Positions 1 to 34,106 of a DNA stretch of 64,000 bases are shown piece by piece. Position numbers and translations under genes: made by a program. Location of the stretch: positions 62,001 to 126,000 of IMG/VR virus record IMGVR_UViG_3300020188_000808; one strand, written 5' to 3'. The notes beneath the pieces were generated by a model that was not told the origin of the DNA, ran no database searches, and worked only from the letters and a program-made list of their open reading frames with translations. Numbering within the stretch: the first letter of the stretch is position 1; each line of letters starts with the position of its first letter.

Positions 1-1889
1 CCAACTGATGCATCTGTTACAACTGATGATACTTGTGTATCAGTACCTGGTACTTCGTAAATACTTGGATATCCTCTTTGCATAGCAATCGCTTGCCATT
101 TAGTGGGCTGTAACCCGTATTCAAAGTCAGCATCAAGCATAGATACTGAGTTACTAACACGCATACGTTCAATAGCATCTGTACCAAAGTCATGTGGTCT
201 AGTAATAACATCACCTTGATCAATAAAGATTTGAATATCATCTGTATCGTAAAATTGTTTAACTTCTTCTTTGATTGGTAATACATTTAATCCGTTTTCA
301 ATAACGTTTGTAATAACACCAAATAGTTCTGTTACTCTTTGACTAACATTTAATTCACTAATTTGTAAAATAGTATTTTGTGAAATTGCACCTGCACCAA
401 CTTGTTCTGTTGGGTATAGTGTATTTGAAAAAATGTAATTGTTAATTACATCTCTAGCAAAATGTTTTGCTAAAATTTCTGGCATTCTATCGCCGTCAAT
501 TTGTGGCGTAGTTTGTACCCAATACTTACTAGCATTGTAATGTGTTTTTGTATTTCCAGAATATTTAATATCGTGTGTAATTCCTTCAATATTAAATCCC
601 ATATCTCTTTCACACTTAGCAGTATTGTATGTATAGTTGTACCATACATCTGAAATTGCATTAGCTGTTGCTGATACAAATATGTGATCTGAAGTATCAG
701 ATGAAATACCAACATTAATTGTAACTGTGTCTGTAGTAGAACTTTCAATTAAAATTGGTTTATTATAAGTTGGATCTGTTCCTGTATCATTAGGCACACC
801 ACTTGCTCTTGGATATGCATGTTCAGTAGCATGATTATCTTTAGCACAAGTAAATGTTAAACCACCAGGAGCAATTCTAATATAATCTCCTCTATAAAAC
901 GTATGACTAGGAATTGTTAAAACCATTTGGCCACTTGCTGGACTAAATGTTGCCGCAGTTGGAGTAAATCTTGTACTTGCCGCAACTTTACCTGCAATCC
1001 AAGCAACAGTTTCTTTCTTTAAAAACTCTAAGTTTGCTTCTAATAGTGCTACTGCTTTTGGAGAATAAACTCTATTATCTGTATCTTTCTTTAGGTATAC
1101 TGTAGTAACTGTACCAGTTCTTTCAAGGAACTTTGGAAAGTCTTCTTCAATACCTTTAGTTAACTGTGAAGTATCATCTGTTTGGAATGCAGTTGACGCA
1201 CCTAAATCAGGGTCACTAAAGTTATATAAAATTTCGTTGTTTGTTGAATCTGTAATCAACAATAAATCGTTTGCAGGAACACGAGTTTGAATTTTAACAC
1301 TTGAAATTTGTGATCTCTGTAGTGGAGGAATAACATCTAAGCCGCCTGCAATAACAGTTGTAATGATTCCCATTAGTTCTGTTATTCTTGCATCAGTACC
1401 TGTTTCATAGTTACTGCCGTTGTCATAAACTTGCACTTGTGCTGGTGGTTCTGATTGTAAACTTGTGTAAGGAACTTGTGGTAGAATGTAGTTATTAATT
1501 AAACTAACAACAAAGTTCTTAGCCGCAATTTCAGGAGCTCTATCACCATCAATCTGCGGAGTTGAATTAATCCAATACTTACTTGCTAAGAAACGTGCTT
1601 GATAATTTCCGCCATAACGCAAATCCCAAAGTACGCCGGTTGCTCCGTCTGTACCTTCTAAATTGTATCGTGTATCTCGTCTACATAGTACATCATTGTA
1701 TGTGTAGTTGTACCATATTGATCCTGGATTACCTGTATTTGCCGCAACTTGTGCAGTAAGCCATGCTGACAGTTCTTCAACAATAAAGTTAATGTTTGAT
1801 TTTATTAGACTGTATGCATACGGAAATCTATTTTCACTAATAGGAATTCCTGGTTGAAATATATACGAGTCAATTTTTTTCTTTGCCAT
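1..1889 (-). CDS. Large virion structural/fibre protein, N-terminal part (runs off window start)
   Basis: ATG at 1889 (MAKKKIDSYIFQPG...). Read by hand as open to the window edge. Two YNYTYN..C.RD modules like those in 13609..19731. Absent from the ORF track, presumably because no stop lies in the window. Confidence 0.75.
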   Translation of the reverse strand, partial: MAKKKIDSYIFQPGIPISENRFPYAYSLIKSNINFIVEELSAWLTAQVAANTGNPGSIWYNYTYNDVLCRRDTRYNLEGTDGATGVLWDLRYGGNYQARFLASKYWINSTPQIDGDRAPEIAAKNFVVSLINNYILPQVPYTSLQSEPPAQVQVYDNGSNYETGTDARITELMGIITTVIAGGLDVIPPLQRSQISSVKIQTRVPANDLLLITDSTNNEILYNFSDPDLGASTAFQTDDTSQLTKGIEEDFPKFLERTGTVTTVYLKKDTDNRVYSPKAVALLEANLEFLKKETVAWIAGKVAASTRFTPTAATFSPASGQMVLTIPSHTFYRGDYIRIAPGGLTFTCAKDNHATEHAYPRASGVPNDTGTDPTYNKPILIESSTTDTVTINVGISSDTSDHIFVSATANAISDVWYNYTYNTAKCERDMGFNIEGITHDIKYSGNTKTHYNASKYWVQTTPQIDGDRMPEILAKHFARDVINNYIFSNTLYPTEQVGAGAISQNTILQISELNVSQRVTELFGVITNVIENGLNVLPIKEEVKQFYDTDDIQIFIDQGDVITRPHDFGTDAIERMRVSNSVSMLDADFEYGLQPTKWQAIAMQRGYPSIYEVPGTDTQVSSVVTDASV

Positions 1890-1897
1890 CTGTTTTC

Positions 1898-2926
1898 CTA
1901 CATTCCGAAAGCAACAGCCATTGCTGATGCCCTACTGTCTACATATTTTTTGTTAGTAACTGTTGTAGCTGTTGTTGGGTTTGCTTGTACTTGTGCCGAA
2001 GCAAACGTTGCATTAGCCGGAGTTACTGCTCCAATTGTAGTGTTATTTATTGTTCCTGCGGTTGCTGTTAGGTTGTTAGTGATAACTGACCCTGGCTTAG
2101 TCGAACCAATACTTACACCATCTATATTGCCGCCACCTGCTGGTGCAATAGTTAATCTACCACTACCTGTTGGGCTTACATTTACATTCGCATTTAAACC
2201 TGTAAAGTTTGCAGTATCTGTTACTGTTAATAAGTTAGCAGTAATATCCATGTTATTAAGTGTTCCACCGTTTGATGGATTTATTACTACTGTTCCTGAA
2301 CTTCCAGTTGGAGATAGTGTAATAACTGCATTCTCACCCTGGGCTGTTAAGTTACCGGTTGTTGTAATTCTACTAAAATTACCAATACCACTAACTAGTG
2401 GATCAATAACTGTAATTTCTACTAAAGGTATTTGGTCACCGTCACCATACCATAATGTTGCTGGTGCATTATCTGGAACTGCAAAGGTTATTTTACCTTC
2501 AAATTTACTTTGTGCATCATTGCCTGTAAGTGTTGTAAGACCGTCTTTAGAAGTATGTGTTAGCCCTGTATTAAAGTTAGAATATACACTACCATCAAAG
2601 CTGAATATATTCATTGTGATGTCACCAGTTATATCACCAGCTTCATTTAATTCTCTTAAAAATAAGTTAAAAACATAACTACTTCCTCGAACAAGCTCAA
2701 TTGGTGGATTTAGTAATAACTCATCTGGTTCGTCTGGATTATATACTTCGTCAATAGTAAATCCGTTACCTGCTTGTCTAAATAAGAAATCGCCAGCTGT
2801 ATCAACAACCTCGTCGACAACGGTATATGTTAATGTGCGTACACTAACATTACCAACTTCGTCAACTTCAAACCCTGGACTAGTAAATCCATACTGTGCT
2901 TGAAAGGGTGATTTAATTACTGCCAT
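1898..2926 (-). CDS. Virion structural/fibre protein with degenerate cupredoxin-like module
   Basis: 342 aa. LVRGSSYVFN...FAVPDNAPATLWY module without Cys/His ligands. Thr-rich beta repeats. C-terminal NKKYVDSRASAMAVAFG. Confidence 0.65.
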   Translation of the reverse strand: MAVIKSPFQAQYGFTSPGFEVDEVGNVSVRTLTYTVVDEVVDTAGDFLFRQAGNGFTIDEVYNPDEPDELLLNPPIELVRGSSYVFNLFLRELNEAGDITGDITMNIFSFDGSVYSNFNTGLTHTSKDGLTTLTGNDAQSKFEGKITFAVPDNAPATLWYGDGDQIPLVEITVIDPLVSGIGNFSRITTTGNLTAQGENAVITLSPTGSSGTVVINPSNGGTLNNMDITANLLTVTDTANFTGLNANVNVSPTGSGRLTIAPAGGGNIDGVSIGSTKPGSVITNNLTATAGTINNTTIGAVTPANATFASAQVQANPTTATTVTNKKYVDSRASAMAVAFGM

Positions 2927-2951
2927 TTATGTTCTCCAATAGTATTTATCA

Positions 2952-4646
2952 CTAGTTTTGTACTACTATTAATCCATGCATTGCACCATGGAATTGACAA
3001 TTATAATGATATGTTCCTGCCGCAGTAGGTTCCCAAACTACATTTCCTGATGTTGAACCTTGGCCTGTAGCCGCTGGTGAAACAACATTGCCAGTACCTG
3101 TTGAGTTTACTGTCTTAATGTAGAACGGATGTCCTGGAGCATTAACAGCAAATGTAAGTGTATCGCCAACACTAACTGTAACTGTTTGATTATTTCCGGA
3201 AACTGCTCCTAATGCGTCTGTGCCTGATAATACATATGCACCTGACCCGTCATTAGTTGTATTAATTGTATAGCTATCTCCTGGTGTTGTACTTGTGTCG
3301 ACAATAGCTAAGTTAAATGTTGATTCGCCATTATCTAATGAAATTACAAATCCTTCATCGCCTTCTGTTGTTGCATCAGCAGTTGCAGTAAATGTTAATG
3401 AGTCTGTTGTACCAACAACAAAGTTACCTGTTAAAGAAGCTCCTGCTAAATCTGCACTAGTAACACCTGTAATTGTATAAGGTAGTACTGTACCATTGTC
3501 AACATTTGAAGTGCTAAGTGTAATTGTAAATGCGTTTCCTTCGTTAACTGTTGTCTGTGTTGATCCTAAAGTATAACTTGGAATTAAAGGACTTAAACTT
3601 GTGTCGCCAAACGCAACTTCAACTGTTGTAGCAGTACCGTCAATTGACATTACAAAAGTTTCGTCGCCGTCAGTATTTAAATCTTCAGCCGCAGTAAACA
3701 CAATAGATTCTGTAGTTCCTACTTCAAAGTTTCCAGATAGATCAGCGCCGCCTATGTCTGAACTGTCAACGCCAGTAATTGTATATCCAACTAAAGTTCC
3801 TTCTTCAACATTTTCTGCTGTTAGAGTAATTGTAAATGATTCACCTTCGTTAACACTTGCCGCTGTTGATGTAAGTCCGTAACTAACAGATGGTGTTGTA
3901 CTTGTATCTTGAATAACAATACTTGTAGTAGCTTGGTTGTTGTCAAGTTTAATTTGCAGTACTTCTTGTCCTTCTGAAGTTGAATCAACAGTAATTGGAA
4001 AACTAAGAATATCAGTAGTACCAACAATAAATGATCCTGTAAGATTAAATCCGCCTATGTCTGCACTTTGTATTCCTGAAATTGTATAAGGTAATACTGT
4101 ACCTGCAAGTACATTTGATGTAACTAATGTTATTGTAACTGTTTGTCCAAGTTCGCCTGTGTTTGTAGTACTTGGGTTAAGTGTATAAACTGGTGCGTCG
4201 GCCGCTCTGCTTGATCCTAACAATGTTGCTGTAGGTTCGTTTTGTGTCGCATAATAATTTGCTGAATAAATTACTTTTGCACCTTGGATAGCTGTTGAGT
4301 CATCTTGTACTCTTGGATATGCTACTAATTTAAAGAATGAATCTGTAACTTCAACTTCTAATTGTATTAGATCGTTTCCTAAATTACTACGTCCATATAC
4401 AACAATATTTGCTTCACTAGTACTAGCAGTTGCTAAACACTTAAGAACTTCTTTGCGTTCACTGTTTACATCACACGCAACAGTATATTCAACACCGAAA
4501 TAACTTCCTACATACCAGCGATCTAATTCTGTTCCTGATTCTACTAGTGTATAACTTGGACCTGCGTAAGACAAGTTGGTTCCGTTACGAAACTCAATTG
4601 TACTGTTTTGTCCACGTCTAAAATATTTGGTGATATCGAAGCTCAT
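2952..4646 (-). CDS. Virion protein with 3 Calx-beta/Ig-like repeats and C-terminal cupredoxin (plastocyanin-like) domain
   Basis: 564 aa. Three ~100-aa repeats (VNEG.SFTITL...GT.LPYTITG). C-terminal GHPF...YNCQFHGAM copper-ligand pattern. Confidence 0.7.
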   Translation of the reverse strand: MSFDITKYFRRGQNSTIEFRNGTNLSYAGPSYTLVESGTELDRWYVGSYFGVEYTVACDVNSERKEVLKCLATASTSEANIVVYGRSNLGNDLIQLEVEVTDSFFKLVAYPRVQDDSTAIQGAKVIYSANYYATQNEPTATLLGSSRAADAPVYTLNPSTTNTGELGQTVTITLVTSNVLAGTVLPYTISGIQSADIGGFNLTGSFIVGTTDILSFPITVDSTSEGQEVLQIKLDNNQATTSIVIQDTSTTPSVSYGLTSTAASVNEGESFTITLTAENVEEGTLVGYTITGVDSSDIGGADLSGNFEVGTTESIVFTAAEDLNTDGDETFVMSIDGTATTVEVAFGDTSLSPLIPSYTLGSTQTTVNEGNAFTITLSTSNVDNGTVLPYTITGVTSADLAGASLTGNFVVGTTDSLTFTATADATTEGDEGFVISLDNGESTFNLAIVDTSTTPGDSYTINTTNDGSGAYVLSGTDALGAVSGNNQTVTVSVGDTLTFAVNAPGHPFYIKTVNSTGTGNVVSPAATGQGSTSGNVVWEPTAAGTYHYNCQFHGAMHGLIVVQN

Positions 4647-4746
4647 TTTACCTTTTACATTCCTCTTTAGTATATTTACCTAATTTGCAGACTGTTACGA
4701 GTTATGAGAAATACCTAAATATCGCAGGTCTAATGGGTGTAATTTA

Positions 4747-6558
4747 CTAATTTTTTAATGTTACTAGCTTTTGATATTCAGGTAGATAAAGATATTCGAT
4801 GTCACTATTAGCAAGTGTACGTACTGCATCATCAAGTGTTTCAACTAAAGGCTCGCCACCTAAATTAAAACTTGTATTAAAGATAATACTAATACCTGTG
4901 CGTTCTTTAAATGCTTTAATTACATCATAGTAGTGTTTATTTTGATCTCTATTAACAGTTTGAATACGACATGTTCCGTCAACATGAATAATACTTGGAA
5001 TCTTATCTGCAATGCCGTCTTGGCAGTTTACAGCATACATCATTGTTGGTGAACTTTTCATTCCACGTAGGTCAAACCATTCATGTACATCTTCTTCTAA
5101 AATAGATCCTGCAAACGGACGAAAGTATTCACGTCTTTTAACTTTGTTTACATAATCTTTACCATTAGGATCTGTTGGATCGTACATAATAGTTCTATTA
5201 CCTAATGCACGTGGTCCGTTTTCTGAACGTCCTTGGAATAATGTAACGATTTTTCTATCTACTAATAATTCTACTGCTTTTGCGTTGTCGCAATCTTCAA
5301 CAGTTGCTTCGTATTTTTCTACTACTTTGTTAATATCATCTTCAGAATAACAGTAAGCCGGTCCTTCATATAATGTTTCTTGTTGTTTTTGAACTTTGTT
5401 ACTTTTAGTTAAACGTCTGTGCATTAACATTGCACCGCCCATGGCTGTACCTGCATCGTTACTTACTGGCTCAACATAGATTTCAATTCCGTCATCTTTT
5501 AATGCTTCTAAATAATGATAGTTAGCAACACAGTTAAGTCCATATCCTCCACTAATAACTACTTTATTTTTTCCTGACATTTGAACTGCTTTACGAATTA
5601 ATTTAACAACTTCTTCTTGGCTTTCAGTTTGAATATTATATGCCATGTTGCGTCTATTTTCTAAATAGGTTACGTCTTGCGTTTCTGGATTGTCGCCGTG
5701 GTCAGTTAAGTAAGGGTGCATATTGTAATTAACATGAGCTCCATTAGGATATGTTGGAACAATAACATGTCTATCTGCTTGTGAAGTTAATGTATCATGT
5801 CTAAAGATTTTTGGTGCAGTATCAGCTTTTCCATATGGAAATAGTCCCATAGTCTTGCCTGCTTCAATAAAACTAAATCCACAGTATTCTGTTACTGCCT
5901 CATATGCTTTAACAATTCCAGCATTTTCTGAAATAACTAACTCATGTGTAGCTTCTTTATCTTCGTCATACATTTCACTTGAAAACTCAGGTATCCAAGC
6001 ACCCATTAAAGGACCGTTAGCACCAATGTGCTTGTATAATGTTTTAAAATTGTCAGGATAATTACAATCGTAAATACTTTCAGTTTCCCAAACAGTAGTA
6101 GGTTGCCCGCCAATATCTAATGTAATAAAAGTTCCTGCACCATCTACAATAAGTGCTACTGCATCTTCAAATCCTGAACGATAAAATGCACAAGCCGCAT
6201 GTAACTTGTGATGAATATTTGACATGTCAATTACTTGTGGATGAGATGTACCAGTGTAAGGTAATCTTTTAATTAATCCTAACTTACGTGCAAGACCTGT
6301 ATAAACATCGTCTCCACTAAAGTCTACTTTACCAGCAGTTTGATCTAAATTTTGTGTATGTGCAACAACTAAAAAATCTAATGTATCAGTGTATTCAAGT
6401 ATTTTAACCATACTTGCATATGGCCCGCCATCATACTTTTGTCTAGTTAATCGTTCTTCTTCAATTGAAAAAACAATTTCACCATCTTTTAATAAACATA
6501 CTCCGCCGTTGTGTCCTCTAGCGATTCCTGCAATCCATACTGGCTTTTTAGTTGGCAT
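4747..6558 (-). CDS. O-carbamoyltransferase, NodU/CmcH/TobZ family
   Basis: 603 aa. Motifs EEERLTRQK, HHKLHA, DGAG, GKTMGL, GG..LNCVAN, GPRALGNR, KRREYFRPFA, HVDGTCRIQTV, NTSFN..GEP. Confidence 0.92.
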   Translation of the reverse strand: MPTKKPVWIAGIARGHNGGVCLLKDGEIVFSIEEERLTRQKYDGGPYASMVKILEYTDTLDFLVVAHTQNLDQTAGKVDFSGDDVYTGLARKLGLIKRLPYTGTSHPQVIDMSNIHHKLHAACAFYRSGFEDAVALIVDGAGTFITLDIGGQPTTVWETESIYDCNYPDNFKTLYKHIGANGPLMGAWIPEFSSEMYDEDKEATHELVISENAGIVKAYEAVTEYCGFSFIEAGKTMGLFPYGKADTAPKIFRHDTLTSQADRHVIVPTYPNGAHVNYNMHPYLTDHGDNPETQDVTYLENRRNMAYNIQTESQEEVVKLIRKAVQMSGKNKVVISGGYGLNCVANYHYLEALKDDGIEIYVEPVSNDAGTAMGGAMLMHRRLTKSNKVQKQQETLYEGPAYCYSEDDINKVVEKYEATVEDCDNAKAVELLVDRKIVTLFQGRSENGPRALGNRTIMYDPTDPNGKDYVNKVKRREYFRPFAGSILEEDVHEWFDLRGMKSSPTMMYAVNCQDGIADKIPSIIHVDGTCRIQTVNRDQNKHYYDVIKAFKERTGISIIFNTSFNLGGEPLVETLDDAVRTLANSDIEYLYLPEYQKLVTLKN

Positions 6559-7378
6559 CTTTTATTCCTCTGTAACTTCTATCCCAATTTACTAACTTAG
6601 TAATATTTTTAATAGTTTGTTTATAGTCATTAGTTTTACACTCTATAACAGTATCTATCATTTTTTTCGTTGTATCATCTAAGTTCTGGTTTAAATATGA
6701 CTGCACAAAACTTAAATGTTGTGTTGGACTAGGGTGTAACTCTACCCATTTTTCACCGTTTTCTTCAAACCACCAACTGTGTTCTGGACTATTCCAAGCA
6801 TGTAACCCTAAAGGTTCTAACCATTCAGGTCCTTCTAACACATATCTATATTGTTCTAAATTAAATTCTTTAAATGCATCAGCAAGTTCGGGAGTATTTC
6901 TTAAATTTTCTCCATGTCCTTTTTGATGCGGTATATCAGTACCTAACGTTTCTAAGTTACTAATACTTGTAAAATAAAACTTGCAATTAGTATCTTTTAA
7001 TAATCCTTTAGTAAGTATGATGTTATTCATTGTATGTAAAAACAATGCTTTCTCATCATAAAAAGTTTCTATCCATTTATCATCAAATACTTCTTTATTC
7101 TGATAACTGAATATACTACCTTTAGTTTGCCAAGGTTCTTTGTGCTTAAAGTTAAGATAGTCGTAACGTAAATGACTTGACCATTGTACGATTACTGTAT
7201 CGTCTTTGTCAATTTCATTTGTAGCATGGCATTCTGCAACACGTTCAGCAATGGCTCTGTTACCTAAACCTGCGTGTCCCCAGTTTTGATATTCATCGAA
7301 ATCTTGTGCATATATGTCTGCATATGTAGGCCAATTCCATGATGTATAGGAACATCCAAACACAAATAAACGTTTCAT
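6548..7378 (-). CDS. SGNH/GDSL-like hydrolase-fold protein
   Basis: 276 aa. N-terminal FVFGCSYT, G.GN, IVQWS, C-terminal ELHPS. Confidence 0.6.
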   Translation of the reverse strand: MKRLFVFGCSYTSWNWPTYADIYAQDFDEYQNWGHAGLGNRAIAERVAECHATNEIDKDDTVIVQWSSHLRYDYLNFKHKEPWQTKGSIFSYQNKEVFDDKWIETFYDEKALFLHTMNNIILTKGLLKDTNCKFYFTSISNLETLGTDIPHQKGHGENLRNTPELADAFKEFNLEQYRYVLEGPEWLEPLGLHAWNSPEHSWWFEENGEKWVELHPSPTQHLSFVQSYLNQNLDDTTKKMIDTVIECKTNDYKQTIKNITKLVNWDRSYRGIKDAN

Positions 7379-7380
7379 TA

Positions 7381-8376
7381 TTAAGCAGTTACAGTTGTTT
7401 CTTCAGTAGCTTGGTACTTTTCACCAACTTTTTTCTTATTTCTAATTCCTGCTGTTACTGATTCACAAATGACACTTTCAACTTTTTCGTTCATTGCCAT
7501 AATACCGTCGTTGGTTCTGTCTGCATATTCGTCTGTTGTAACTCTAATAGGTGAATATACTCTAGCACCTTCGCCCATATCTAAAATATCAAAGTTTTTA
7601 TCTTCTGGATATGAAACATTAATTGGAAAAGTTGATCCTATTACTACTGTACACTTCTTATCTAGTGCATGAGCAATATGCTGTCCTACACTATCACACC
7701 CTAAAAAGTAATCTGCGTTTGCAATAATGCCTGCCCAATGTCTTAGGTCTGCACCCATTGGACTTGCTACAGGTTCTTTACAACCGTGTTTTGAAAAATC
7801 AATACCAAATTCTGCCATATGTACTACAGCATATTTCTTTGAAAGTGACTTAACAATGTTGACCGAGTTTTCAGCTTCAAAACTTCTGCCACTCCAGTCA
7901 GTAATAACACCGTTGTCGTGTTGAACTGCTCTTCCAAATGGTTGGAACACAACTACTTTATCTTTTTTAGTTTTTTCTCTAACTTCATCAACTAACTTTT
8001 TACCAAATAGCATTTCTTCTCTTGATAATTTTAAGATAGGTCTTTGTAGTTTACGTAATCCTTTATTATTAATTTGAATATCGTATGCTTCTGCAATACT
8101 ACATTGTTGATTATAGTACTCAAACACCCTGTATGGTTCAGGTGTTAATAAATTCATGTCTTTAAGTTTATCTTGGAAGAGATTCTTGTGCCAGTGATCA
8201 TATGCCTTTGCATGTAGTACTGGATGACCTTTATAAAAGTCAGTACCGCCTTCGCATACAATGATAAAGTTGTCTTCTGGATTTTCTTCTGCAAACTTTT
8301 CAAGTGCTGGAATACTAGCAAGAACTCTGCCAGCACCACCATTGATAAAAATAGCCGTATTTCTTTTATCTGTCAT
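7381..8376 (-). CDS. GT-B glycosyltransferase-like protein (GT9 heptosyltransferase-like)
   Basis: 331 aa. C-terminal IIANADYFLGCDSVGQHIAHALDKKCTVVIG matches the GT9 pattern. N-terminal GGAGRV lacks the usual Asp. Confidence 0.65.
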   Translation of the reverse strand: MTDKRNTAIFINGGAGRVLASIPALEKFAEENPEDNFIIVCEGGTDFYKGHPVLHAKAYDHWHKNLFQDKLKDMNLLTPEPYRVFEYYNQQCSIAEAYDIQINNKGLRKLQRPILKLSREEMLFGKKLVDEVREKTKKDKVVVFQPFGRAVQHDNGVITDWSGRSFEAENSVNIVKSLSKKYAVVHMAEFGIDFSKHGCKEPVASPMGADLRHWAGIIANADYFLGCDSVGQHIAHALDKKCTVVIGSTFPINVSYPEDKNFDILDMGEGARVYSPIRVTTDEYADRTNDGIMAMNEKVESVICESVTAGIRNKKKVGEKYQATEETTVTA

Positions 8377-8433
8377 TTTATATCCTTCTACAATTCGTGT
8401 AATTGCTTGTATAGATATTTAATGTAGATCAGT

Positions 8434-9804
8434 TTAGCTTGTTTGTTTTCTGGCTGTAATAGTTCCAGCAATACGTGTATTGCCTCTTGAATCTGTAGGA
8501 GGTGTTGGAAGCCCATCTGCAATGCCATCATCATATGGTGTACCGTCTGTGCTTAGACCTAATCTAGCCAGATCATTTGCCATATAGTTGCCGCCTGATT
8601 CAGGTGGAATAAAGTGTCCAGTTGCAGGATGATATGTATGATCCATTAACCAGCCATCTGCAGGGTTGTTACGATCTTCTTCACTTGTGTAACGTCCTAT
8701 TGCACCCGGGAATTGGTCTCTTTCACCATATACACCTGGTCTAGCCGCGTTTGGACTTTGTGGAAATCTTACCTTCCAAGGATCAATTCTAGCTACTTTA
8801 CTTAGATTAAATGTAGCACCTGAACCAGCATCTGTTGTTGGTGTAGTTGCTACTGCGTCAAGTGTTCTTGCTTCTTTAATATGTCTTGCGTTAAATGCAT
8901 TACGTGTTCTAACACCTGTAATTGCACCATCTGAATCAACTGATGTAACAATAATGTTTACATCTAATGAATCGTTTTCGTTAACAATAGCAGTATCGTC
9001 TTGACCACTAGTTGCCGCTTCAAAATCAAATCCTGGTCTTTTTCCCATTGGTTGACATAAATCGTCTAATGTACCCACGTCTGCATTTGAAAAACCAAAT
9101 ACACTTGCGTCAACATTAAAGTTATCGCCTACTGCGTATCCTGTTCCTGCTGTTGCAATAGTTACTGTCCAAGCCGCACCGTATGTAGCTGGTAAATTTC
9201 TTAAAGTTGTTCTGTAATCTTGCCAAGCAGTTAGTAATGATGCTGGCATATCTTCTGATACATGACCATCAGCCGCCGCTAATTTACCCCAACGTACTCT
9301 TTTAATTGCTTCCCAATCTGTGTGCGGTTTAATAAACGGATATGGTGTATTCCATTGTTGTGCAACCGGATCATAAGTAATTTCATCTCTATCGTATGTA
9401 TGGTCTGGTGTTGGAACTTCAGGCTCAATGTGTACAAATGGATTACCTTCCCAATCATTAATTGGAAGTGTTTCACTTACTTTTGCTCTACCTTCTAAAA
9501 ATAGTGTGTCTTGATCAGTTTCCATTAATTCACATAACAAAGGATTTTCTTCACAGTTAACTTTAACCATGTATTCACCAACGTTTGGCACATAATCATC
9601 TTCAACTTCGTAGCTAAATTTAACTTCGCCTGTACGCTTGTTGTCACGTTTACGTAGGAATACCCACATTTCTCTTGGACCTTGATACGTCCACTGCCCT
9701 ACTTTACCTAATGTTGTAGTCTGATAAAGATATGCATCTGGCATATCATAAGAGAAATCTACATCAATTTCAATAACTCTATTTTGTGCATTTGGATCTA
9801 TCAT
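8434..9804 (-). CDS. Tail-fibre assembly chaperone-like protein with inserted domain
   Basis: 456 aa. WEAIKRVR...AWQDYRTTLRNLP chaperone motif. Paralog of 11429..12121. Confidence 0.65.
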   Translation of the reverse strand: MIDPNAQNRVIEIDVDFSYDMPDAYLYQTTTLGKVGQWTYQGPREMWVFLRKRDNKRTGEVKFSYEVEDDYVPNVGEYMVKVNCEENPLLCELMETDQDTLFLEGRAKVSETLPINDWEGNPFVHIEPEVPTPDHTYDRDEITYDPVAQQWNTPYPFIKPHTDWEAIKRVRWGKLAAADGHVSEDMPASLLTAWQDYRTTLRNLPATYGAAWTVTIATAGTGYAVGDNFNVDASVFGFSNADVGTLDDLCQPMGKRPGFDFEAATSGQDDTAIVNENDSLDVNIIVTSVDSDGAITGVRTRNAFNARHIKEARTLDAVATTPTTDAGSGATFNLSKVARIDPWKVRFPQSPNAARPGVYGERDQFPGAIGRYTSEEDRNNPADGWLMDHTYHPATGHFIPPESGGNYMANDLARLGLSTDGTPYDDGIADGLPTPPTDSRGNTRIAGTITARKQTS

Positions 9805-9826
9805 ATTCTTTTCCTAATTGTTACCT

Positions 9827-10633
9827 TTAATAATATACCACATATACTGCGCCTTCAGCACCTGGTGAACCACAACAGCATCCGCCGCCCATAGTTTGAC
9901 CTGCTTCGCCTGCGCCGCCTGGCCATGCACCAAATCCTTGACACTCACCGCCTCTTGCACAACAACCATTTGGTCCAATCTTTGGTCCTGCTTGTGCCAT
10001 TGGAGCAGTAGGAACAAATTGTAGTCCTCTATCGCCACAATGCTGTGATCTTTGTGCAGATCCAGTCATACTTGCAATACCAAAGTCAACGTTATTAGGT
10101 TGAATTTGACAGTTATAACAGTTCATACAACATCCGTAACAGTTAAAAAATCCATGACAATGTGTACAGTTACTACAGTAACCGCCACAAGCTACAGCAC
10201 AAAAACATGAGCCGCCTGTTGGTGTTCCAAATACAAAACTATTATGTCCTGCGTAGTTATTACCTGCATATAAACAACAGCCCGAACGTCCTGCACAAAT
10301 TGTGAATTGATCACCACCTGCTACGTTAGCTGATTTAATTGCATATCCTCCTGAATCCGATGGATATCCCTGCATACAGCAACATCCGCCTGTTCCTGAG
10401 CCACCACCGCCCCACATTTCCCATACAGCAAATGTAGCACCTTGTGGTACTGTCCAACGACAACATTTACCACCATTGTTGTTACAATAATATCTTGATT
10501 CTGGTGGAACTCCGTAAGCTGTTGCTGGCCACGCTTCGTTGTGATCTGCGTTCCAAGCATAACTTACAGTAAACGACTTTGGAGCAATAACTCCTACATC
10601 GTAACCTGGTAAATAATCTCTTAAACTTGACAT
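9827..10633 (-). CDS. Cys/Gly-rich fibre-tip (gp38-adhesin-like) protein
   Basis: 268 aa, 27 Cys by hand count. WTVP...WGGGGSG.GGCCC and terminal G.V.V.Y glycine-rich-domain pattern. Confidence 0.65.
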   Translation of the reverse strand: MSSLRDYLPGYDVGVIAPKSFTVSYAWNADHNEAWPATAYGVPPESRYYCNNNGGKCCRWTVPQGATFAVWEMWGGGGSGTGGCCCMQGYPSDSGGYAIKSANVAGGDQFTICAGRSGCCLYAGNNYAGHNSFVFGTPTGGSCFCAVACGGYCSNCTHCHGFFNCYGCCMNCYNCQIQPNNVDFGIASMTGSAQRSQHCGDRGLQFVPTAPMAQAGPKIGPNGCCARGGECQGFGAWPGGAGEAGQTMGGGCCCGSPGAEGAVYVVYY

Positions 10634-10645
10634 ATTCTATACTCC

Positions 10646-11416
10646 CTACGCTATATCCGATTGATAATAAACTACTACTAATCCGCCAGCGCCTGGTCCA
10701 CCGCAGTAACAAGTACCATTGTGAGTATGTAGCGTACCACCGCCTCCGCCTGGGAAGTCAGCTGGTCCGTCTGCATCTCTACCGTGTGTTTTATAACAGT
10801 TATCTCTTGACATTCTAGCTTGTTGTCCACCGTATGGTGCTGACGTCATGTTTTCCCATGATGAACTAGCACACATTGCTGTACCTGCTCCACCACCGTT
10901 AAATCCGCACATACTAAAGTCTGCGCCTTTTACACAACCGCACATTCTATTTGGACATCCGCAATGTCCGCCCCATGCACTACCAAATCCGCAAGTTGCA
11001 CAGCCATATCCGCCGCCACTTGAGCATAAGCACATGTAACCGCCTGAACAACAGCCGTTGCTTGAACACGCATAACTACCACATCCTGGACAGCCCATAA
11101 CTGGTCTACAGCAACCTGCCGCTCCTGCACATAATGTAAATGATGCCGCATTATTAATTTCTACAATTTTTCTACCGTATGATCCACTTCCACCAGGAAA
11201 GCCAGCCATACAACAACAGCCACCGCCGCCGTCACCGCCTGCACCCCACGTTTCAAAAGCGGCCCATGTTACATCGTCACTTGGGTTCCAATTACAACAG
11301 CATCCTGGGTTACTATTTCTAGTATTATCAAAAGAACTATGATAAACATAAATTGTTCTTAATGCTGGAGTACCTGTTGCAGTTCCAAGTTGTAGTAATG
11401 ATCTTAATGCAGACAT
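10646..11416 (-). CDS. Cys/Gly-rich fibre-tip (gp38-adhesin-like) protein
   Basis: 256 aa, 27 Cys by hand count. WGAGGDGGGGCCC and PGGGGG...GAGGLVVVYY. Confidence 0.65.
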   Translation of the reverse strand: MSALRSLLQLGTATGTPALRTIYVYHSSFDNTRNSNPGCCCNWNPSDDVTWAAFETWGAGGDGGGGCCCMAGFPGGSGSYGRKIVEINNAASFTLCAGAAGCCRPVMGCPGCGSYACSSNGCCSGGYMCLCSSGGGYGCATCGFGSAWGGHCGCPNRMCGCVKGADFSMCGFNGGGAGTAMCASSSWENMTSAPYGGQQARMSRDNCYKTHGRDADGPADFPGGGGGTLHTHNGTCYCGGPGAGGLVVVYYQSDIA

Positions 11417-11428
11417 TTATATTTCTCC

Positions 11429-12121
11429 TTAACCTATTCCTACGCCATCAGTTGACGGTGGTTCAGCATATCCGCCTACAGTTGGTTCTTCTGGGAACTT
11501 AACCATATGTGCTGGATATTCATCACTCTCGCCACGTTTGAACGTAACCGGTAATTCTCTTAATTTTGTTCTGAAATCAATCCATGGTTGCTTAACACTA
11601 TCAGGCATATCTGCCGCAACTCTGTGATCTGTTGCATCTAATCTATCATTTCTTAGTTGAGTTAGTGTTTCCCAAGTTTGCCAAGGTTGTTTCCAAGTTA
11701 GTGTCCAATTATTACTATCTTCATCATGTACACATAAATCTCTTTCGTAAGCATGATCTGGCATTGGAGGCCATTGAGTTGAGTAATTTCCATAACCTTC
11801 TGGTAATGCTGTTACTACTTCTGATTGTGATAGTGTTACTGTATGTGGTAGGAAGATAGAACACATTAATGTGTCTTCTCCAGCACAATCTAAAGTAACT
11901 AATCTTTCACCTTCTGGTGTAGTATCAGTTGTTGGATTGTAAATAAAATCTTCATCTGGTGCGTTTTGACTCAGTGTGTTTTTTCCTGTAGTAGCATCAA
12001 CAAATACGTATAGTCTGTCTGGACCTGTATAACTTGCTGTTGCTGTGTCCCCATCCGAGTTTGATTGACTCAAATATTCATTGGGGATATCATATGTAAA
12101 GTTTTTTGTAATTTCAGCCAT
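11429..12121 (-). CDS. Tail-fibre assembly chaperone-like protein
   Basis: 230 aa. WETLTQLRNDRLDATD...PWIDFRTKLRELP motif. Confidence 0.7.
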   Translation of the reverse strand: MAEITKNFTYDIPNEYLSQSNSDGDTATASYTGPDRLYVFVDATTGKNTLSQNAPDEDFIYNPTTDTTPEGERLVTLDCAGEDTLMCSIFLPHTVTLSQSEVVTALPEGYGNYSTQWPPMPDHAYERDLCVHDEDSNNWTLTWKQPWQTWETLTQLRNDRLDATDHRVAADMPDSVKQPWIDFRTKLRELPVTFKRGESDEYPAHMVKFPEEPTVGGYAEPPSTDGVGIG

Positions 12122-12150
12122 TTTGTTTCCTTCGTTTGTATTTAGTCATA

Positions 12151-12891
12151 TTAACTGTACGATACTTTAACCATTCCGCCTGAGCCCCAATGGCCCCAAC
12201 AGCATGGTCCGCCACATGCAGTACCATTATATCCAGCGTCCCCTGGGTAAGGTTGAGCACAACCCCATCCGCAACCTGAACAAGTCATTGGATTACCGCA
12301 ATAATCTCGACCTTTTCTAGTATTTGCACCTTTTGGTGGTCCACTTACGTAGTCCCACATTTGATTGTGACAATATTGTGTAGCCATAGGATTATTTCTA
12401 CTATGACCTAATCTTAAATCGCCCTGCGTACCGCCCGAAATTTGTGAACATCCAAAGCAACAGTTATATGCATAATGTGCATGACAGTTTGTTCTACCTG
12501 TACATCCACCTCTAGCACACGTAGTTGCAATACCAGATCCTGATACAAAACTAGTTGAACCATCAATGCCTAAGCAATCTCTTTCACAACATGCTCCGTT
12601 ACCAGCCGCACAAATTGTGTATTGGCAACCAGCTATTGTGTTTACTGATCTAATTGCGTATGATCCGCCGCCTGCGTTCTGTGAACTAAACTGACAGCAA
12701 CATCCTCCTGCTCCTGCGGCTCCTGCACCCCATAGCTCAAATGTTACGTTAACAATGTCTGCTGGTACTGTCCAAAGACAACAGCAACCGCCATTATTAA
12801 TACCCCTATTATTGTTGTACACATAGAAGAACTTTGTAGGAGCCGAAGTTCCCGAAGTAGTATCTCCTAAAAGTGTTCTCAGGTCTGCCAT
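12151..12891 (-). CDS. Cys/Gly-rich fibre-tip (gp38-adhesin-like) protein
   Basis: 246 aa, 25 Cys by hand count. GGCCCLWTVP...WGAGAAGAGGCCC...GSGGMVKVSY. Confidence 0.65.
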   Translation of the reverse strand: MADLRTLLGDTTSGTSAPTKFFYVYNNNRGINNGGCCCLWTVPADIVNVTFELWGAGAAGAGGCCCQFSSQNAGGGSYAIRSVNTIAGCQYTICAAGNGACCERDCLGIDGSTSFVSGSGIATTCARGGCTGRTNCHAHYAYNCCFGCSQISGGTQGDLRLGHSRNNPMATQYCHNQMWDYVSGPPKGANTRKGRDYCGNPMTCSGCGWGCAQPYPGDAGYNGTACGGPCCWGHWGSGGMVKVSYS

Positions 12892-12909
12892 AGTTAGTAT
12901 CCTCTCTTC

Positions 12910-13242
12910 TTACGTTCCTGACATAATCCAGCCGTATGTGGACCCGGAATAAATCAATGTAATAGCTACGTTATTAATGTCTAAAGTTAAGTCTTCTGAT
13001 AAATTCTGGATTTTTGAACCGTTTCTACCAAGTGTTACATTGTTAGTATTAAAACTACCTGTAACATCAATGATTGAAATAGTATCGTTTACAATTAAAC
13101 TAGCGTTAGCTGGTAAAGTAATTGTGAATCCACCACCATTTGAATTAGCTAAAATACGATCGTTAACTACAGCTTGATACGTGCTACTAACTTCACGAAT
13201 GACGCTACTTGCAGTTCCTGTTGTTGATATATATCTTCCCAT
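12910..13242 (-). CDS. Small fibre-associated beta protein
   Basis: 110 aa. GGFTITLPA...IIDVTGSFNTNNVTLGRNGSKI...LIYSGSTYGW, a pattern typical of phage fibre domains. Confidence 0.6.
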   Translation of the reverse strand: MGRYISTTGTASSVIREVSSTYQAVVNDRILANSNGGGFTITLPANASLIVNDTISIIDVTGSFNTNNVTLGRNGSKIQNLSEDLTLDINNVAITLIYSGSTYGWIMSGT

Positions 13243-13275
13243 TTTAGTGTTTCCTTTTTATTACTATATTTATCA

Positions 13276-13596
13276 TTATGCTGTAGATGTCTCAATACCC
13301 ATTGCTACTGCACTGACATTTGCGGCACTACTATAAACTACCAGAATTTGCCCTGCCGCCATTGCAATACCTGATCTTTCTAACACACCTTTAGCTAAAA
13401 TTTCAACATCATATTCAATGTATTCACTTGCTAGTGGTGTACCAGCTGATGCGACAGCAACTCTTACCGAAATTGCACTATTTCCTCTATTACAAATCGA
13501 TAGCGTTACAATCCCGAAGGTGTTTGCAGGTACCGTGTAAAGAGAAGTGTTAGTGCCAGCGGCTAAGTCTGCGTGTCCTAATCTTCCTGTGGCCAT
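13276..13596 (-). CDS. Small beta-sandwich virion protein (paralog of 25495..25824 and 29440..29772)
   Basis: 106 aa. LYTVPA...LSICN motif. Confidence 0.6.
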   Translation of the reverse strand: MATGRLGHADLAAGTNTSLYTVPANTFGIVTLSICNRGNSAISVRVAVASAGTPLASEYIEYDVEILAKGVLERSGIAMAAGQILVVYSSAANVSAVAMGIETSTA

Positions 13597-13608
13597 ATTG
13601 TTTCTCCT

Positions 13609-31230: not shown

Positions 31231-31328
31231 TTGTTTTCTCCTTTAAAACGTTCTAGGTTTACGCAGTGGGTCAGTTCTGCATAAGTCCGCAACATGCGGC
31301 ACGATTATTGACACAAGTATTTATCTGA

Positions 31329-33226: not shown

Positions 33227-33249
33227 CATAGTCTCCAAATTTTAGTCAT

Positions 33250-33332
33250 AAAAAAAGGCGACTTGCTGTAGCCTTTAAGCATCGCTACTTGGGTCGCCTT
33301 CCGATTGTGTGTTTACTCTATTAGTAAACAAT
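33250..33332 (-). ncRNA. Candidate ~83-nt small RNA or attenuator leader
   Basis: Follows TTGACA-N16-TATAAT. 8-bp 5' hairpin (33310-33330) and a long terminator hairpin (33255-33300) plus U-tract. No evident ORF. Confidence 0.5.
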
Positions 33333-33338
33333 AATATT

Positions 33339-33366
33339 ATTATACAAGTATTTAGTAATTTGTCAA
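33339..33366 (-). promoter_or_regulatory. Sigma70-type promoter with nested late motif
   Basis: TTGACA (33366-33361), 16-nt spacer containing CTAAATA, TATAAT (33344-33339). Confidence 0.75.
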
Positions 33367-34097: not shown

Positions 34098-34106
34098 AGT
34101 AATACT

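What the first reader, a model, noticed from the sequence alone, without database searches (positions are those of the whole stretch)
4747..8422. Glycosyltransferase-like / SGNH-like / carbamoyltransferase cassette inside the fibre operon
Seen: three tightly coupled enzyme-like genes behind their own late motif (8416-8422), between adhesin genes and structural genes. Known: NodU/TobZ enzymes O-carbamoylate sugars, GT9-related TibC/AAH enzymes heptosylate adhesins, SGNH proteins add or remove acyl groups. Inference: a pathway that builds a carbamoylated glycan on virion proteins rather than on DNA. The GT has GGAGR where GT9 has G.GD, so it may be catalytically atypical.
Basis: partly seen in the sequence, partly recalled or inferred. 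Interest (0 to 1): 0.62.

Follow-up and report, generated by a model that had tools for sequence, protein, structure and literature searches.

The report
Sugar-tailoring enzyme cassette in phage fibre module
Three tightly linked enzyme genes (a heptosyltransferase-like protein with an unusual active site, a small esterase/acyltransferase-like protein and a carbamoyltransferase) sit in the tail-fibre gene block of an uncultured jumbo marine phage and of hundreds of its relatives, and most likely build a decorated sugar whose target, the phage's own fibres or the host surface, is still unknown.

Summary
The three genes exist as described: A 8376-7381, B 7378-6548 and C 6558-4747, all on the minus strand, with junctions of +2 and -11 nt.

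- **C** is a clear NodU/TobZ-type O-carbamoyltransferase.
- **A** folds like GT9 heptosyltransferases. It keeps their D-S-G-x-H sugar-nucleotide motif, but an invariant Arg (GGxGR) sits where WaaC has its catalytic Asp.
- **B** has an SGNH fold with conserved Ser10, Asn40, Glu/Asp213 and His215. It belongs to an unnamed family seen so far only in viral contigs.

In 72 of 72 evaluable related viral contigs, A is followed by 0-2 copies of B and then C. The unit always lies between the same fibre genes, even when it is inverted.

The phage also encodes HldE-like, epimerase, cupin and HAD-like sugar-nucleotide genes, most of them about 11 kb from the cassette.

A joint pathway that makes a carbamoylated, heptose-type sugar is well supported. 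The acceptor is not settled:
- fibre proteins, about 0.4
- host envelope glycan, about 0.3
- DNA, under 0.1

The "own late motif" is weak evidence. It is non-canonical, and relatives drive the cassette from either late-type or sigma70-type promoters.

I rate this a new variant of a known kind, of moderate interest.

The parts
7381..8376 (-). Gene A, 331 aa: GT9-fold glycosyltransferase-like protein of the viral 'GGxGR' subfamily (T4-GC 302 / phrog_8954)
   Evidence: phrog_8954 E 5e-147, no Pfam hit. Weak TIGR02201 hit over residues 210-249. AF2 model pLDDT 78. All solved GT9 entries rank on top (Foldseek 9.6e-9; VIA Z 21.2-16.1, other GT-B families 12 or less). R17 aligns with WaaC D13, and CDSVGQH aligns with the GT9 DSGxxH motif.
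6548..7378 (-). Gene B, 276 aa: SGNH-fold esterase/acyltransferase-like protein of an unnamed family seen only in viral contigs (related to DUF6071)
   Evidence: No Pfam, PHROG or NCBIfam hit. AF2 pLDDT 92. SGNH/GDSL entries only; TesA Z 12.2 over 159 residues, rmsd 3.1. G8-C9-S10, N40 and H215 are present in every aligned homolog, with E or D at 213. 240 homologs, none with a functional name. The protein atlas points to DUF6071/Lipase_GDSL.
4747..6558 (-). Gene C, 603 aa: NodU/CmcH/TobZ-family O-carbamoyltransferase
   Evidence: Carbam_trans_C E 1.2e-57 and Carbam_trans_N E 7.4e-25. phrog_1601 E 2.6e-161. Similar to solved carbamoyltransferases 7xb6, NovN, GdmN and TobZ, E 5e-53 to 1e-38, with the HHxxH metal motif aligned.
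8377..8433 (-). 57-nt spacer before A, holding the variant motif ATTAAATA (8416-8423) and a Shine-Dalgarno-like AGGA
   Evidence: Sequence read. The motif lies 47 nt before the start. It is not enriched in the window but is kept in 16 close relatives.
8434..9804 (-). Upstream neighbour, 456 aa: tail-fibre-assembly-chaperone-like protein
   Evidence: Phage_tail_APC E 1.2e-4; phrog_9740 and phrog_4912. It is next to the cassette in nearly all related loci.
9827..12891 (-). Three Cys/Gly-rich paralogs (268, 256 and 246 aa; phrog_4205) plus a second chaperone-like gene (230 aa): putative adhesin and chaperone sets
   Evidence: Composition of 25-27 Cys and 18-21% Gly in each paralog.
2952..4646 (-). 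Downstream neighbour, 564 aa: repeat protein with Ser/Thr/Pro linkers and a C-terminal cupredoxin-like domain. In most related loci only the ~140-aa C-terminal domain follows C
   Evidence: phrog_27200, 9158 and 15006; weak Cupredoxin_1 hit. Sequence read. Synteny.
3..2926 (-). 342-aa Thr/Asn/Gly-rich fibre-like protein (2926-1898) and the N-terminus of a 2569-aa fibre protein (1889-3, running off the window)
   Evidence: The giant ORF lies at genome 63889-56180.
13267..13273 (-). Nearest canonical late-type motif upstream of the cassette (GATAAATA, 32 nt before the 110-aa gene). A possible start of a roughly 8.6-kb late transcript that includes the cassette, if nothing ends it before the next canonical motif at 2943-2949
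   Evidence: No intergenic terminator-like site lies between it and the cassette.

Best explanation
The three genes form one soluble, cytoplasmic sugar-tailoring unit.

- **A:** a GT9-fold transferase that has lost the usual Asp base but keeps the nucleotide-sugar motif. It transfers a heptose-type sugar from a nucleotide-activated donor. The phage can help make that donor itself, with an HldE-like kinase/nucleotidyltransferase, an epimerase, a cupin and a HAD-like phosphatase.
- **C:** makes carbamoyl-adenylate from carbamoyl phosphate and ATP, and O-carbamoylates a hydroxyl of that sugar. The known parallel is 7-O-carbamoyl-heptose in the Pseudomonas LPS core.
- **B:** an SGNH enzyme with an intact Ser/His/acid triad that adds or removes an O-acyl group. 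It is an optional extra decoration (0-2 copies among relatives).

The most likely acceptor is one or more of the phage's own distal tail-fibre or adhesin proteins, by analogy with TibC/AAH heptosylation of adhesins.

What is shown: the folds, the motifs, the gene linkage, and the presence of the sugar-nucleotide genes. What is inferred: heptose as the sugar, the order of the steps, and above all the acceptor.
For: **Enzyme identities:**

**One unit**
- A is followed by 0-2 B and then C in 72 of 72 evaluable IMG/VR loci. All but one of the junctions run from -53 to +13 nt.
- The A-C pair recurs in a distant member.
- C's clade (44% identity or more) occurs in the same cultured cyanophages and single-cell virus contigs as A.

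**Sugar supply**
- In S-CAM1, S-SSM7 and P-SSM2 the pair is followed by HldE-like, kinase, 'GmhA', cupin and epimerase genes; directly in S-CAM1 and P-SSM2, after four intervening genes in S-SSM7.
- The window's own genome has NUDIX, HldE-like (PfkB + cytidylyltransferase, 418 aa), epimerase, cupin and two 2OG oxygenases at genome 52138-56183. They abut the end of the giant fibre gene. A HAD-like homolog lies at about 205.9 kb.

**Link to fibres**
- The cassette stays between the same fibre genes even when it is inverted.
- Vibrio phage D505 has an A-like gene between two giant tail proteins, with no B or C.
- P0389 is a GT8 domain fused to an A-like domain, right after three Collar-domain fibre genes.
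- P0347 lies next to a DUF2793 protein.

**Location and family range**
- A, B and C have no signal peptide or membrane segment.
- The A family is essentially viral: 4 hits in 185,579 species genomes, all on MAG contigs.

**Transcription:** contigs from salt-marsh RNA libraries, one of them DNase-treated, cover the cassette. DNA carry-over is not excluded.
Against: - There is no direct evidence for any acceptor.
- The fibre module of marine myoviruses is a known hot spot for sugar genes, so position alone is weak (PMC7029224).
- A lacks the GT9 catalytic Asp, so it may use another mechanism, another type of acceptor, or be non-catalytic. Plant PnsB1, a GT9-fold subunit of the NDH complex, is among its best structural matches.
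- Expression is not uniformly late. P-SSM2 has two 11/12 sigma70-type promoters before its A homolog. Contigs with the cassette inverted share a conserved TTGCTT-N17-TGCTAAATT promoter.
- The motif before A in this window is non-canonical.
- No SIS-type GmhA was found in the 267-kb record, so heptose as the sugar is not certain.
Confidence: 0.4

Rival explanations
1. Host-surface remodelling. The cassette heptosylates and carbamoylates a host envelope glycolipid or glycan at the cytoplasmic face of the membrane, as WaaC/WaaF and WapO do. This changes the receptor, and so blocks superinfection or stops progeny from sticking to debris. This is the published guess for cyanophage 'LPS genes'.
For: - The closest characterised relatives of A are LPS core heptosyltransferases.
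- GT9 plus carbamoyltransferase plus heptose genes mirrors the Pseudomonas inner-core cluster, where WapO carbamoylates HepII (PMC8005017).
- Sullivan et al. proposed host-surface change (PMC1079782; PMC3037559), as did the pelagimyophage study (PMC7029224).
- Sigma70-type promoters in P-SSM2 and in the inverted cassettes would give early expression, which suits a slow surface change.
Against: - The catalytic Asp that LPS heptosyltransferases use on Kdo or heptose acceptors is replaced by Arg across the family.
- The family is almost absent from cellular genomes.
- In the loci examined, A-like genes mostly lie in structural or fibre modules rather than in lysogeny or early modules. One lies near a portal gene and others are on short contigs.
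- B has no signal peptide and no membrane acyltransferase partner. To my knowledge, surface-glycan SGNH acyltransferases normally act outside the cytoplasm.
Confidence: 0.3
2. DNA hypermodification. C carbamoylates a hydroxymethyl-pyrimidine in phage DNA, or a sugar attached to it, and A glycosylates the base.
For: - A phage NodU-type enzyme makes 5-carbamoyloxymethylcytosine from 5hmC (PMC8670742).
- Phage GT-B enzymes add heptose to 5hmC (bioRxiv 10.1101/2023.12.21.572611).
- Early-type promoters in some relatives.
Against: - No thymidylate-synthase/dCMP-hydroxymethylase homolog, C5-methyltransferase or TET/JBP gene was found in the 267-kb record. The TET search had no positive control, and the record is about 75% complete.
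- In the eLife study the DNA enzymes co-occur with thymidylate-synthase homologs. Carbamoyltransferases next to glycosyltransferases were on unmodified contigs.
- The cassette lies in the fibre module. The replication module has its own separate Carbam_trans_N-only gene.
- A resembles GT9, and T4 beta-glucosyltransferase does not appear among the listed matches.
Confidence: 0.06
3. A is not a transferase. It may be a sugar-nucleotide-binding scaffold or a fibre-assembly factor, while B and C tailor a free nucleotide sugar or another small molecule.
For: - Loss of the Asp base.
- The plant PnsB1 protein has the same fold (Z 17.7). To my knowledge it is non-catalytic.
- The neighbours are fibre-chaperone-like genes.
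Against: - The donor-binding motif D228-S229-x-x-x-H233 and several Arg residues are almost invariant over 77 representatives, which suggests selection on substrate binding or catalysis.
- One family member is fused to a GT8 glycosyltransferase domain.
- One member scores as Pfam Glyco_transf_9.
- To my knowledge, some inverting GT-B enzymes (protein O-fucosyltransferases) work with an Arg and no base.
Confidence: 0.12

Closest known systems
TibC / AAH bacterial autotransporter heptosyltransferases (GT9) with their adhesins TibA / AIDA-I
   Same: GT9 fold (TibC Z 16.8, 255 residues aligned). The transferase gene lies next to the genes of large repetitive adhesins. The enzyme is cytoplasmic and would act on a protein.
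   Different: 11% identity. A has no run of four Cys like the iron-binding Cys cluster that I recall for TibC. Arg replaces the catalytic Asp. No carbamoyltransferase or SGNH partner is known to me for TibC/AAH. The acceptor here is unproven.
LPS inner-core heptosyltransferases WaaC/WaaF with the carbamoyltransferase WapO (Pseudomonas core cluster)
   Same: Same enzyme families side by side (GT9 and NodU-type carbamoyltransferase), plus heptose-nucleotide genes. The product there is 7-O-carbamoyl-heptose (PMC8005017).
   Different: A fails the Pfam and NCBIfam cut-offs and lacks Asp13. The system is viral, lies in a fibre module, and includes an SGNH enzyme. No lipid A-Kdo acceptor is implied.
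Cyanophage 'LPS gene clusters' (T4-GC 302-308 of P-SSM2, S-SSM7, S-CAM1)
   Same: A and C are orthologs of T4-GC 302 and 303 (46-62% and 47-63% identity), in the same place between fibre genes.
   Different: In the window the heptose genes are moved about 11 kb away, to the far side of the fibre genes. B sits between A and C, and no tblastn match to B was found in any of 50,697 deposited phage records. The head genes resemble those of jumbo PA5oct/XbC2-type phages rather than cyanophages.
Phage 5-hydroxymethylcytosine carbamoyltransferase (Yang et al. 2021)
   Same: Same protein family as C, and also phage-encoded.
   Different: That enzyme co-occurs with a thymidylate-synthase homolog and deaminases. 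None was found here, and C's partners are a GT9-like and an SGNH protein.
Virion glycosylation in mycobacteriophages (Freeman et al. 2023, cited in PMC12801897)
   Same: Phage-encoded glycosyltransferases that decorate the phage's own structural proteins.
   Different: As far as I know, those use other glycosyltransferase families, act on capsid and tail-tube proteins in Actinobacteria phages, and involve no carbamoylation or heptose.

Membership tests
GT9 (ADP-heptose-type glycosyltransferases; Pfam PF01075) | GT-B fold closest to solved GT9 enzymes | tested here: met
   All solved GT9 entries rank first (Z 21.2-16.1). The next GT-B families score 12.1 or less. Foldseek E 9.6e-9.
GT9 (ADP-heptose-type glycosyltransferases; Pfam PF01075) | Sequence match above the family cut-off | tested here: not met
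   No Pfam hit. TIGR02201 scores 17.9 bits against a cut-off of 170. A profile search of the PDB finds no GT9. Only one distant family member (P0333) carries a precomputed PF01075 hit.
GT9 (ADP-heptose-type glycosyltransferases; Pfam PF01075) | N-terminal G-D motif with the catalytic Asp (WaaC D13) | tested here: not met
   R17 aligns with D13. Arg is found in 73 of 77 family representatives.
GT9 (ADP-heptose-type glycosyltransferases; Pfam PF01075) | C-terminal D-(S/T)-G-x-x-H donor-binding motif | tested here: met
   CDSVGQH aligns with NDSGLMH of WaaF. D228, S229 and H233 are conserved in 75-76 of 77.
GT9 (ADP-heptose-type glycosyltransferases; Pfam PF01075) | Uses ADP-heptose as donor | not testable with these tools
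   Indirect only: HldE-like, epimerase and HAD-like genes are in the genome and lie next to A in relatives.
TibC/AAH protein heptosyltransferases | Iron-binding Cys cluster and dodecamer (features recalled from memory) | tested here: not met
   A has 6 scattered Cys and no CxxC pairs (sequence). Oligomeric state was not tested.
TibC/AAH protein heptosyltransferases | Acts on an adjacent adhesin protein | not testable with these tools
   Adjacency to fibre or adhesin genes is met.
SGNH/GDSL hydrolase superfamily | SGNH alpha/beta/alpha fold | tested here: met
   TesA Z 12.2, 159 of 177 residues, rmsd 3.1. All 50 listed entries are GDSL/SGNH-type esterases, lipases or acyltransferases.
SGNH/GDSL hydrolase superfamily | Block I G-D-S nucleophile and block V D-x-x-H | tested here: inconclusive
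   The variants G-C-S10 and (E/D)213-x-H215-P are conserved in all aligned homologs.
SGNH/GDSL hydrolase superfamily | Sequence match to a curated SGNH family | tested here: not met
   No Pfam hit even at E 5. The atlas points only to DUF6071/Lipase_GDSL clusters.
NodU/CmcH/TobZ O-carbamoyltransferases | Kae1-like N domain plus YrdC-like C domain, above the Pfam cut-offs | tested here: met
   88.5 bits (cut-off 24) and 194.7 bits (cut-off 27).
NodU/CmcH/TobZ O-carbamoyltransferases | His-rich metal motif of the Kae1-like domain | tested here: met
   HHKLHAAC aligns with HHRAHLAC of the solved enzyme 7xb6.
NodU proper (NCBIfam NF041651 equivalog) | Score above the equivalog cut-off | tested here: not met
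   148 bits against a cut-off of 1000. C is a family member, not a NodU ortholog.
Phage 5hmC carbamoyltransferase system | Co-occurrence with a thymidylate-synthase-type hydroxymethylase | tested here: not met
   No PF00303 match in the 267-kb record. The record is about 75% complete.

The most novel reading that the evidence does not exclude
A widespread group of marine myoviruses O-heptosylates its own tail-fibre adhesins with a viral GT9-derived enzyme that uses an Arg-based, base-free mechanism. It then carbamoylates the sugar, and variably acylates or methylates it. Swapping or inverting the cassette and changing the number of B copies would tune receptor binding or shield the fibres. This would be the first protein-glycan decoration system known on phage fibres, and the first carbamoylated protein glycan.
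Probability: 0.3. Interest if true: 0.8.

Novelty: new variant of a known kind. Interest (0 to 1): 0.55.

Why it matters
- **Abundance.** The A family has about 3,000 members at the 90% identity level in public metagenomes, and the cassette is fixed in the host-recognition module of many marine myoviruses. Yet 20 years after these "LPS genes" were first listed, nobody knows what they act on.
- **If the target is the fibre.** Host range in these ecologically important phages would depend on a post-translational glycan as well as on fibre sequence.
- **If the target is the host surface.** It would be a lytic-phage form of receptor masking.
- **Enzymology.** Either way, the GGxGR enzymes are a new mechanistic branch of GT9, and B defines an uncharacterised SGNH family so far seen only in viral contigs.
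- **Testability.** Cultured carriers exist (S-CAM1, S-SSM7, P-SSM2), so the question can be tested directly.

Tried and rejected
- **Nucleotide search against phages.** Megablast of the cassette against 50,697 phage records found nothing.
- **B against phage records.** tblastn found nothing. The same was true for the 342-aa neighbour.
- **Sequence-profile links.** Links of A and B to solved structures failed. Only fold comparison worked.
- **Complex prediction.** No binding test was made, and none is claimed.
- **Shared acceptor domain.** I looked for a domain next to A-like genes in unrelated phages. Only a phrog_4205-like protein recurred, once.
- **Heptose isomerase.** No SIS_2 (GmhA) domain is in the genome. 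The 'phosphoheptose isomerase' of cyanophage annotations looks HAD-like here.
- **Host.** No psbA or psbD and no tRNA in the window. The host stays unknown.
- **Expression timing from the literature.** The P-SSM2 time course (Lin et al. 2016, PMID 26522011) is not held. The supplements of PMC7238727 list the orthologs but give no temporal class.
- **RNA libraries.** The reads were available only as contigs, so they show presence, not strand, ends or timing.
- **Comparison left out.** I therefore did not compare it with C.

Full report
**What is in the sequence**

Three minus-strand ORFs fill window 4747-8376: A (8376-7381, 331 aa), B (7378-6548, 276 aa) and C (6558-4747, 603 aa).
- The A stop and B start are 2 nt apart. 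B and C overlap by 11 nt.
- A 57-nt spacer precedes A, and a 100-nt spacer follows C.
- No intergenic terminator-like site separates the cassette from its neighbours. The only minus-strand hit near it lies inside gene C. Sigma70-like sites are not enriched in window 1-14000.

The window is bases 62001-126000 of a 267,783-bp IMG/VR virus record, estimated 75% complete.
- Its fibre module resembles that of T4-like cyanophages.
- Its head genes are nearest, at 67% DNA identity, to jumbo phages of the PA5oct/XbC2 type.
- No psbA or psbD was found, so the host is unknown.
- Near-identical sequence occurs in salt-marsh RNA libraries.

**Gene C**

C is an unambiguous member of the NodU/CmcH/TobZ O-carbamoyltransferase family.
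- Carbam_trans_C scores E 1.2e-57 and Carbam_trans_N scores E 7.4e-25, both far above the Pfam cut-offs.
- phrog_1601, 'Nol-like carbamoyltransferase', scores E 2.6e-161.
- It is similar to several solved carbamoyltransferases, with the His motif of the Kae1-like domain aligned.
- It is not a NodU ortholog: 148 bits against an equivalog cut-off of 1000.

**Gene A**

A has no Pfam hit and only a 40-residue, sub-threshold match to LPS heptosyltransferase III. The AlphaFold model (pLDDT 78) is nevertheless closest to every solved GT9 protein.

| Structure | Z |
|---|---|
| Veillonella GT9 (3tov) | 21.2 |
| WaaF | 19.2 |
| WaaC | 17.9 |
| Plant PnsB1 | 17.7 |
| TibC | 16.8 |
| Best other GT-B family | 12.1 |

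Profile alignment and a direct alignment with E. coli WaaC and WaaF give two results.
- GGAGRVL lies on SSMGDVL, so R17 takes the place of the catalytic Asp13.
- CDSVGQH lies on the GT9 donor-binding motif NDSGLMH.

Over 77 full-length representatives from an exhaustive profile search (530 clusters at 50% identity), several positions are almost invariant.
- Arg holds the R17 position in 73.
- G13, G14, G16, Q145, R164, S165, R212, D228, S229, H233 and R278 are nearly invariant.

I call it the GGxGR subfamily.

The family looks viral.
- A scan of one genome from each of 185,579 prokaryote species gave four hits, all on MAG contigs.
- One member scores as Pfam Glyco_transf_9.
- Another is fused behind a GT8 glycosyltransferase domain.

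**Gene B**

B has no hit in Pfam (even at E 5), PHROGs or NCBIfam. No tblastn match was found in any deposited phage genome.
- It has 240 homologs in metagenomes, none with a functional name.
- The model is confident (pLDDT 92). Its listed matches are almost all SGNH/GDSL-type enzymes: TesA Z 12.2 over 159 of 177 residues, plus carbohydrate esterases and the peptidoglycan O-acetyltransferase PatB.
- In 46 aligned sequences, G8-C9-S10, N40 and H215-P216 are present in every homolog that covers them. Position 213 is always Glu or Asp.
- This fits a working Ser/His/acid triad with variant motifs: GCS for GDS, and (E/D)-x-H for D-x-x-H.
- I could not prove residue equivalence.
- A paralog elsewhere in the genome (152341-153207) lies beside a UDP-glucose/GDP-mannose dehydrogenase and radical-SAM genes. 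That is again a sugar context.

**The three genes form one unit, fixed in the fibre module**

I fetched 80 related viral contigs (A 59-100% identical) and called their genes.
- In all 72 loci with enough downstream DNA, A is followed on the same strand by C.
- B lies between them in 0 copies (12 loci), 1 copy (49 loci) or 2 copies (11 loci).
- The junctions run from -53 to +13 nt, apart from one denV insertion.
- A methyltransferase follows C in about a dozen loci.

The unit always sits between two blocks.
- One is a chaperone-like/phrog_4205 block.
- The other is a cupredoxin-like domain gene, the 342-aa gene and a giant fibre gene.
- In at least 11 loci, by the nearest upstream gene, the unit alone is inverted in place.

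Other co-occurrence points the same way.
- Among deposited phage records, C's clade (44% identity or more) occurs in the same cultured cyanophages and single-cell virus contigs as A. Other carbamoyltransferase clades occur elsewhere in phages that lack A.
- A more distant A (E 1.6e-55) is again followed by a carbamoyltransferase.

**Sugar supply**

In S-CAM1 and P-SSM2 the A-C pair is followed directly by five genes: an HldE-like nucleotidyltransferase, a carbohydrate kinase, a 'phosphoheptose isomerase', a cupin and a nucleotide-sugar epimerase. In S-SSM7 four other genes intervene, and the stretch fetched shows no epimerase.

The window lacks these genes, but the genome has them just outside it.
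- NUDIX, a fused PfkB-kinase/cytidylyltransferase (418 aa, HldE-like), an NAD epimerase, a cupin and two 2OG-Fe(II) oxygenases lie at genome 52138-56183.
- They converge on the end of the 2569-aa fibre gene whose N-terminus is window 1889-3.
- The homolog of the cyanophage 'phosphoheptose isomerase' (about 205.9 kb) looks HAD-phosphatase-like, not SIS-like. No SIS_2 domain was found.
- A heptose-type donor is therefore likely but not certain.

**Expression**

- *The phage's real late-type motif.* It is NATAAATA. ATAAATA is depleted overall (15 against 27.5 expected). It lies on the coding strand in 13 of 15 cases, typically 24-35 nt before starts.
- *In the motif's favour.* [A/T]TTAAATA is retained at -41 to -62 in all 16 distinct upstream regions of close relatives. 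It may be a weak variant promoter.
- *Otherwise.* The cassette may be read through from canonical motifs further upstream (13267-13273).
- *Other phages differ.* Eleven distinct loci, including S-CAM1, have a canonical NATAAATA before A, mostly [T/C]ATAAATA. P-SSM2 has two TTGACT-17-TATAAT sites (11/12). The contigs with an inverted cassette share a conserved TTGCTT-N17-TGCTAAATT, an extended -10 promoter of the host type.
- *Conclusion on timing.* It is not uniformly late across the family.
- *RNA libraries.* Contigs from four salt-marsh RNA libraries, one DNase-treated, cover the whole cassette. They cannot show strand, ends or timing, and DNA carry-over is possible.

**What it most likely does**

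A, B and C lack signal peptides and membrane segments, so they act in the cytoplasm.

The best-supported chemistry has three steps.
1. A transfers a heptose-type sugar from a nucleotide donor.
2. C O-carbamoylates that sugar through carbamoyl-adenylate. This is the TobZ mechanism. The known chemical parallel is 7-O-carbamoyl-heptose made by WapO next to WaaC/WaaF in Pseudomonas (PMC8005017).
3. B adds or removes an acyl group as an optional decoration.

**The acceptor is the open point**

For the phage's own fibre or adhesin proteins:
- The cassette is fixed in the fibre module.
- An A-like gene lies between two giant tail proteins in Vibrio phage D505, with no B or C.
- The GT8-A fusion lies right after Collar-domain fibre genes.
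- An A-like gene lies next to a DUF2793 protein.
- The family appears almost only in viruses.
- There are precedents: TibC/AAH, and mycobacteriophage virion glycosylation.

For the host envelope:
- The nearest characterised enzymes act on LPS.
- This is the published hypothesis (PMC1079782, PMC3037559, PMC7029224).
- Some relatives have early-type promoters.

For DNA:
- Both carbamoylation and heptosylation of 5hmC by phage enzymes are known (PMC8670742; bioRxiv 10.1101/2023.12.21.572611).
- However, no hydroxymethylase, C5-methyltransferase or TET gene was found.
- The gene context also differs from that of the DNA systems.

My odds are about 0.4 for fibres, 0.3 for the host envelope, 0.06 for DNA, and 0.12 for a non-catalytic A or a small-molecule product. 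The rest is unassigned.

The Arg that replaces the base may mean an anionic acceptor or a base-free mechanism. To my knowledge, some protein O-fucosyltransferases work in that way. This is a lead, not a test.

**Novelty**

- The A-C pair was catalogued as T4-GC 302/303 in 2005-2010 but never characterised.
- New here are the finding that A is a GT9-derived family with Arg in place of the catalytic Asp, the SGNH family B, the strict A-(B)-C unit and its fixed position, and the mixed promoter types.
- It is a new variant of a known kind: sugar genes in the hypervariable fibre region of marine myoviruses.

**Limits**

- No complex prediction could be run.
- The P-SSM2 time course is not held.
- The printed 5hmC carbamoyltransferase sequence had no reference, so it was not compared with C.
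- No alternative genetic code was used.

Noticed in passing
window 9827-10633, 10646-11416 and 12151-12891 (all minus strand): Three paralogous ~250-aa proteins (phrog_4205) with 25-27 Cys and 18-21% Gly each, including runs such as GGCCC. The 246-aa one is followed directly, and the 256/268-aa pair together, by a tail-fibre-chaperone-like gene. They may be Gly-rich adhesin tips with metal or disulfide clusters.
   Followed up: partly
window 2952-4646 (minus strand): A 564-aa protein with four ~90-aa repeats joined by D-T-S-T-T-P linkers, plus a C-terminal cupredoxin-like domain with a His...Cys-x2-His-x2-Met pattern. In most relatives only this ~140-aa domain is kept, right after the carbamoyltransferase.
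   Followed up: partly
genome G000:C1:52138-56183 (5.8-9.9 kb before the window start): A cluster of NUDIX, an HldE-like kinase/nucleotidyltransferase fusion, an NAD epimerase, a cupin and two 2OG-Fe(II) oxygenases, converging on the giant fibre gene. The oxygenases could hydroxylate proteins or sugars.
   Followed up: partly
genome G000:C1:13075-14085 (minus strand): A second, 336-aa protein with only the Kae1-like Carbam_trans_N domain lies in the replication module, between a DnaB-like helicase and ClpP and near a Toprim-domain, primase-like gene. Its role is unknown and seems separate from the cassette.
   Followed up: partly
genome G000:C1:150035-155705: A paralog of B (288 aa, 33% identity over the N-terminal half) lies beside two radical-SAM/SPASM genes and a UDP-glucose/GDP-mannose dehydrogenase. 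This may be a second sugar-modification locus.
   Followed up: partly
window 31228-31301 (minus strand): A match to the Rfam 'freshwater-2' RNA motif just above its gathering score (51.5 against 49.9 bits), in an intergenic spacer of the structural region.
   Followed up: no
window 33239-35210: About 2 kb with no ORF of 90 aa or more on the minus strand, and no tRNA found. The content was not examined.
   Followed up: no
L057-L108 (inverted-cassette loci), about 100 nt before A: A conserved divergent promoter region. It holds a sigma70-type TTGCTT-N17-TGCTAAATT facing the cassette. A conserved GTATATTTA reads as a TAAATA late-type motif on the opposite strand, facing the fibre genes.
   Followed up: partly
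whole window and genome: The head genes resemble jumbo Pseudomonas/Xanthomonas phages (PA5oct, XbC2), while the fibre module resembles that of cyanomyoviruses. A 335-kb contig in a 'Neomarinimicrobiota' MAG carries a 64%-identical A and is probably a binned phage.
   Followed up: no
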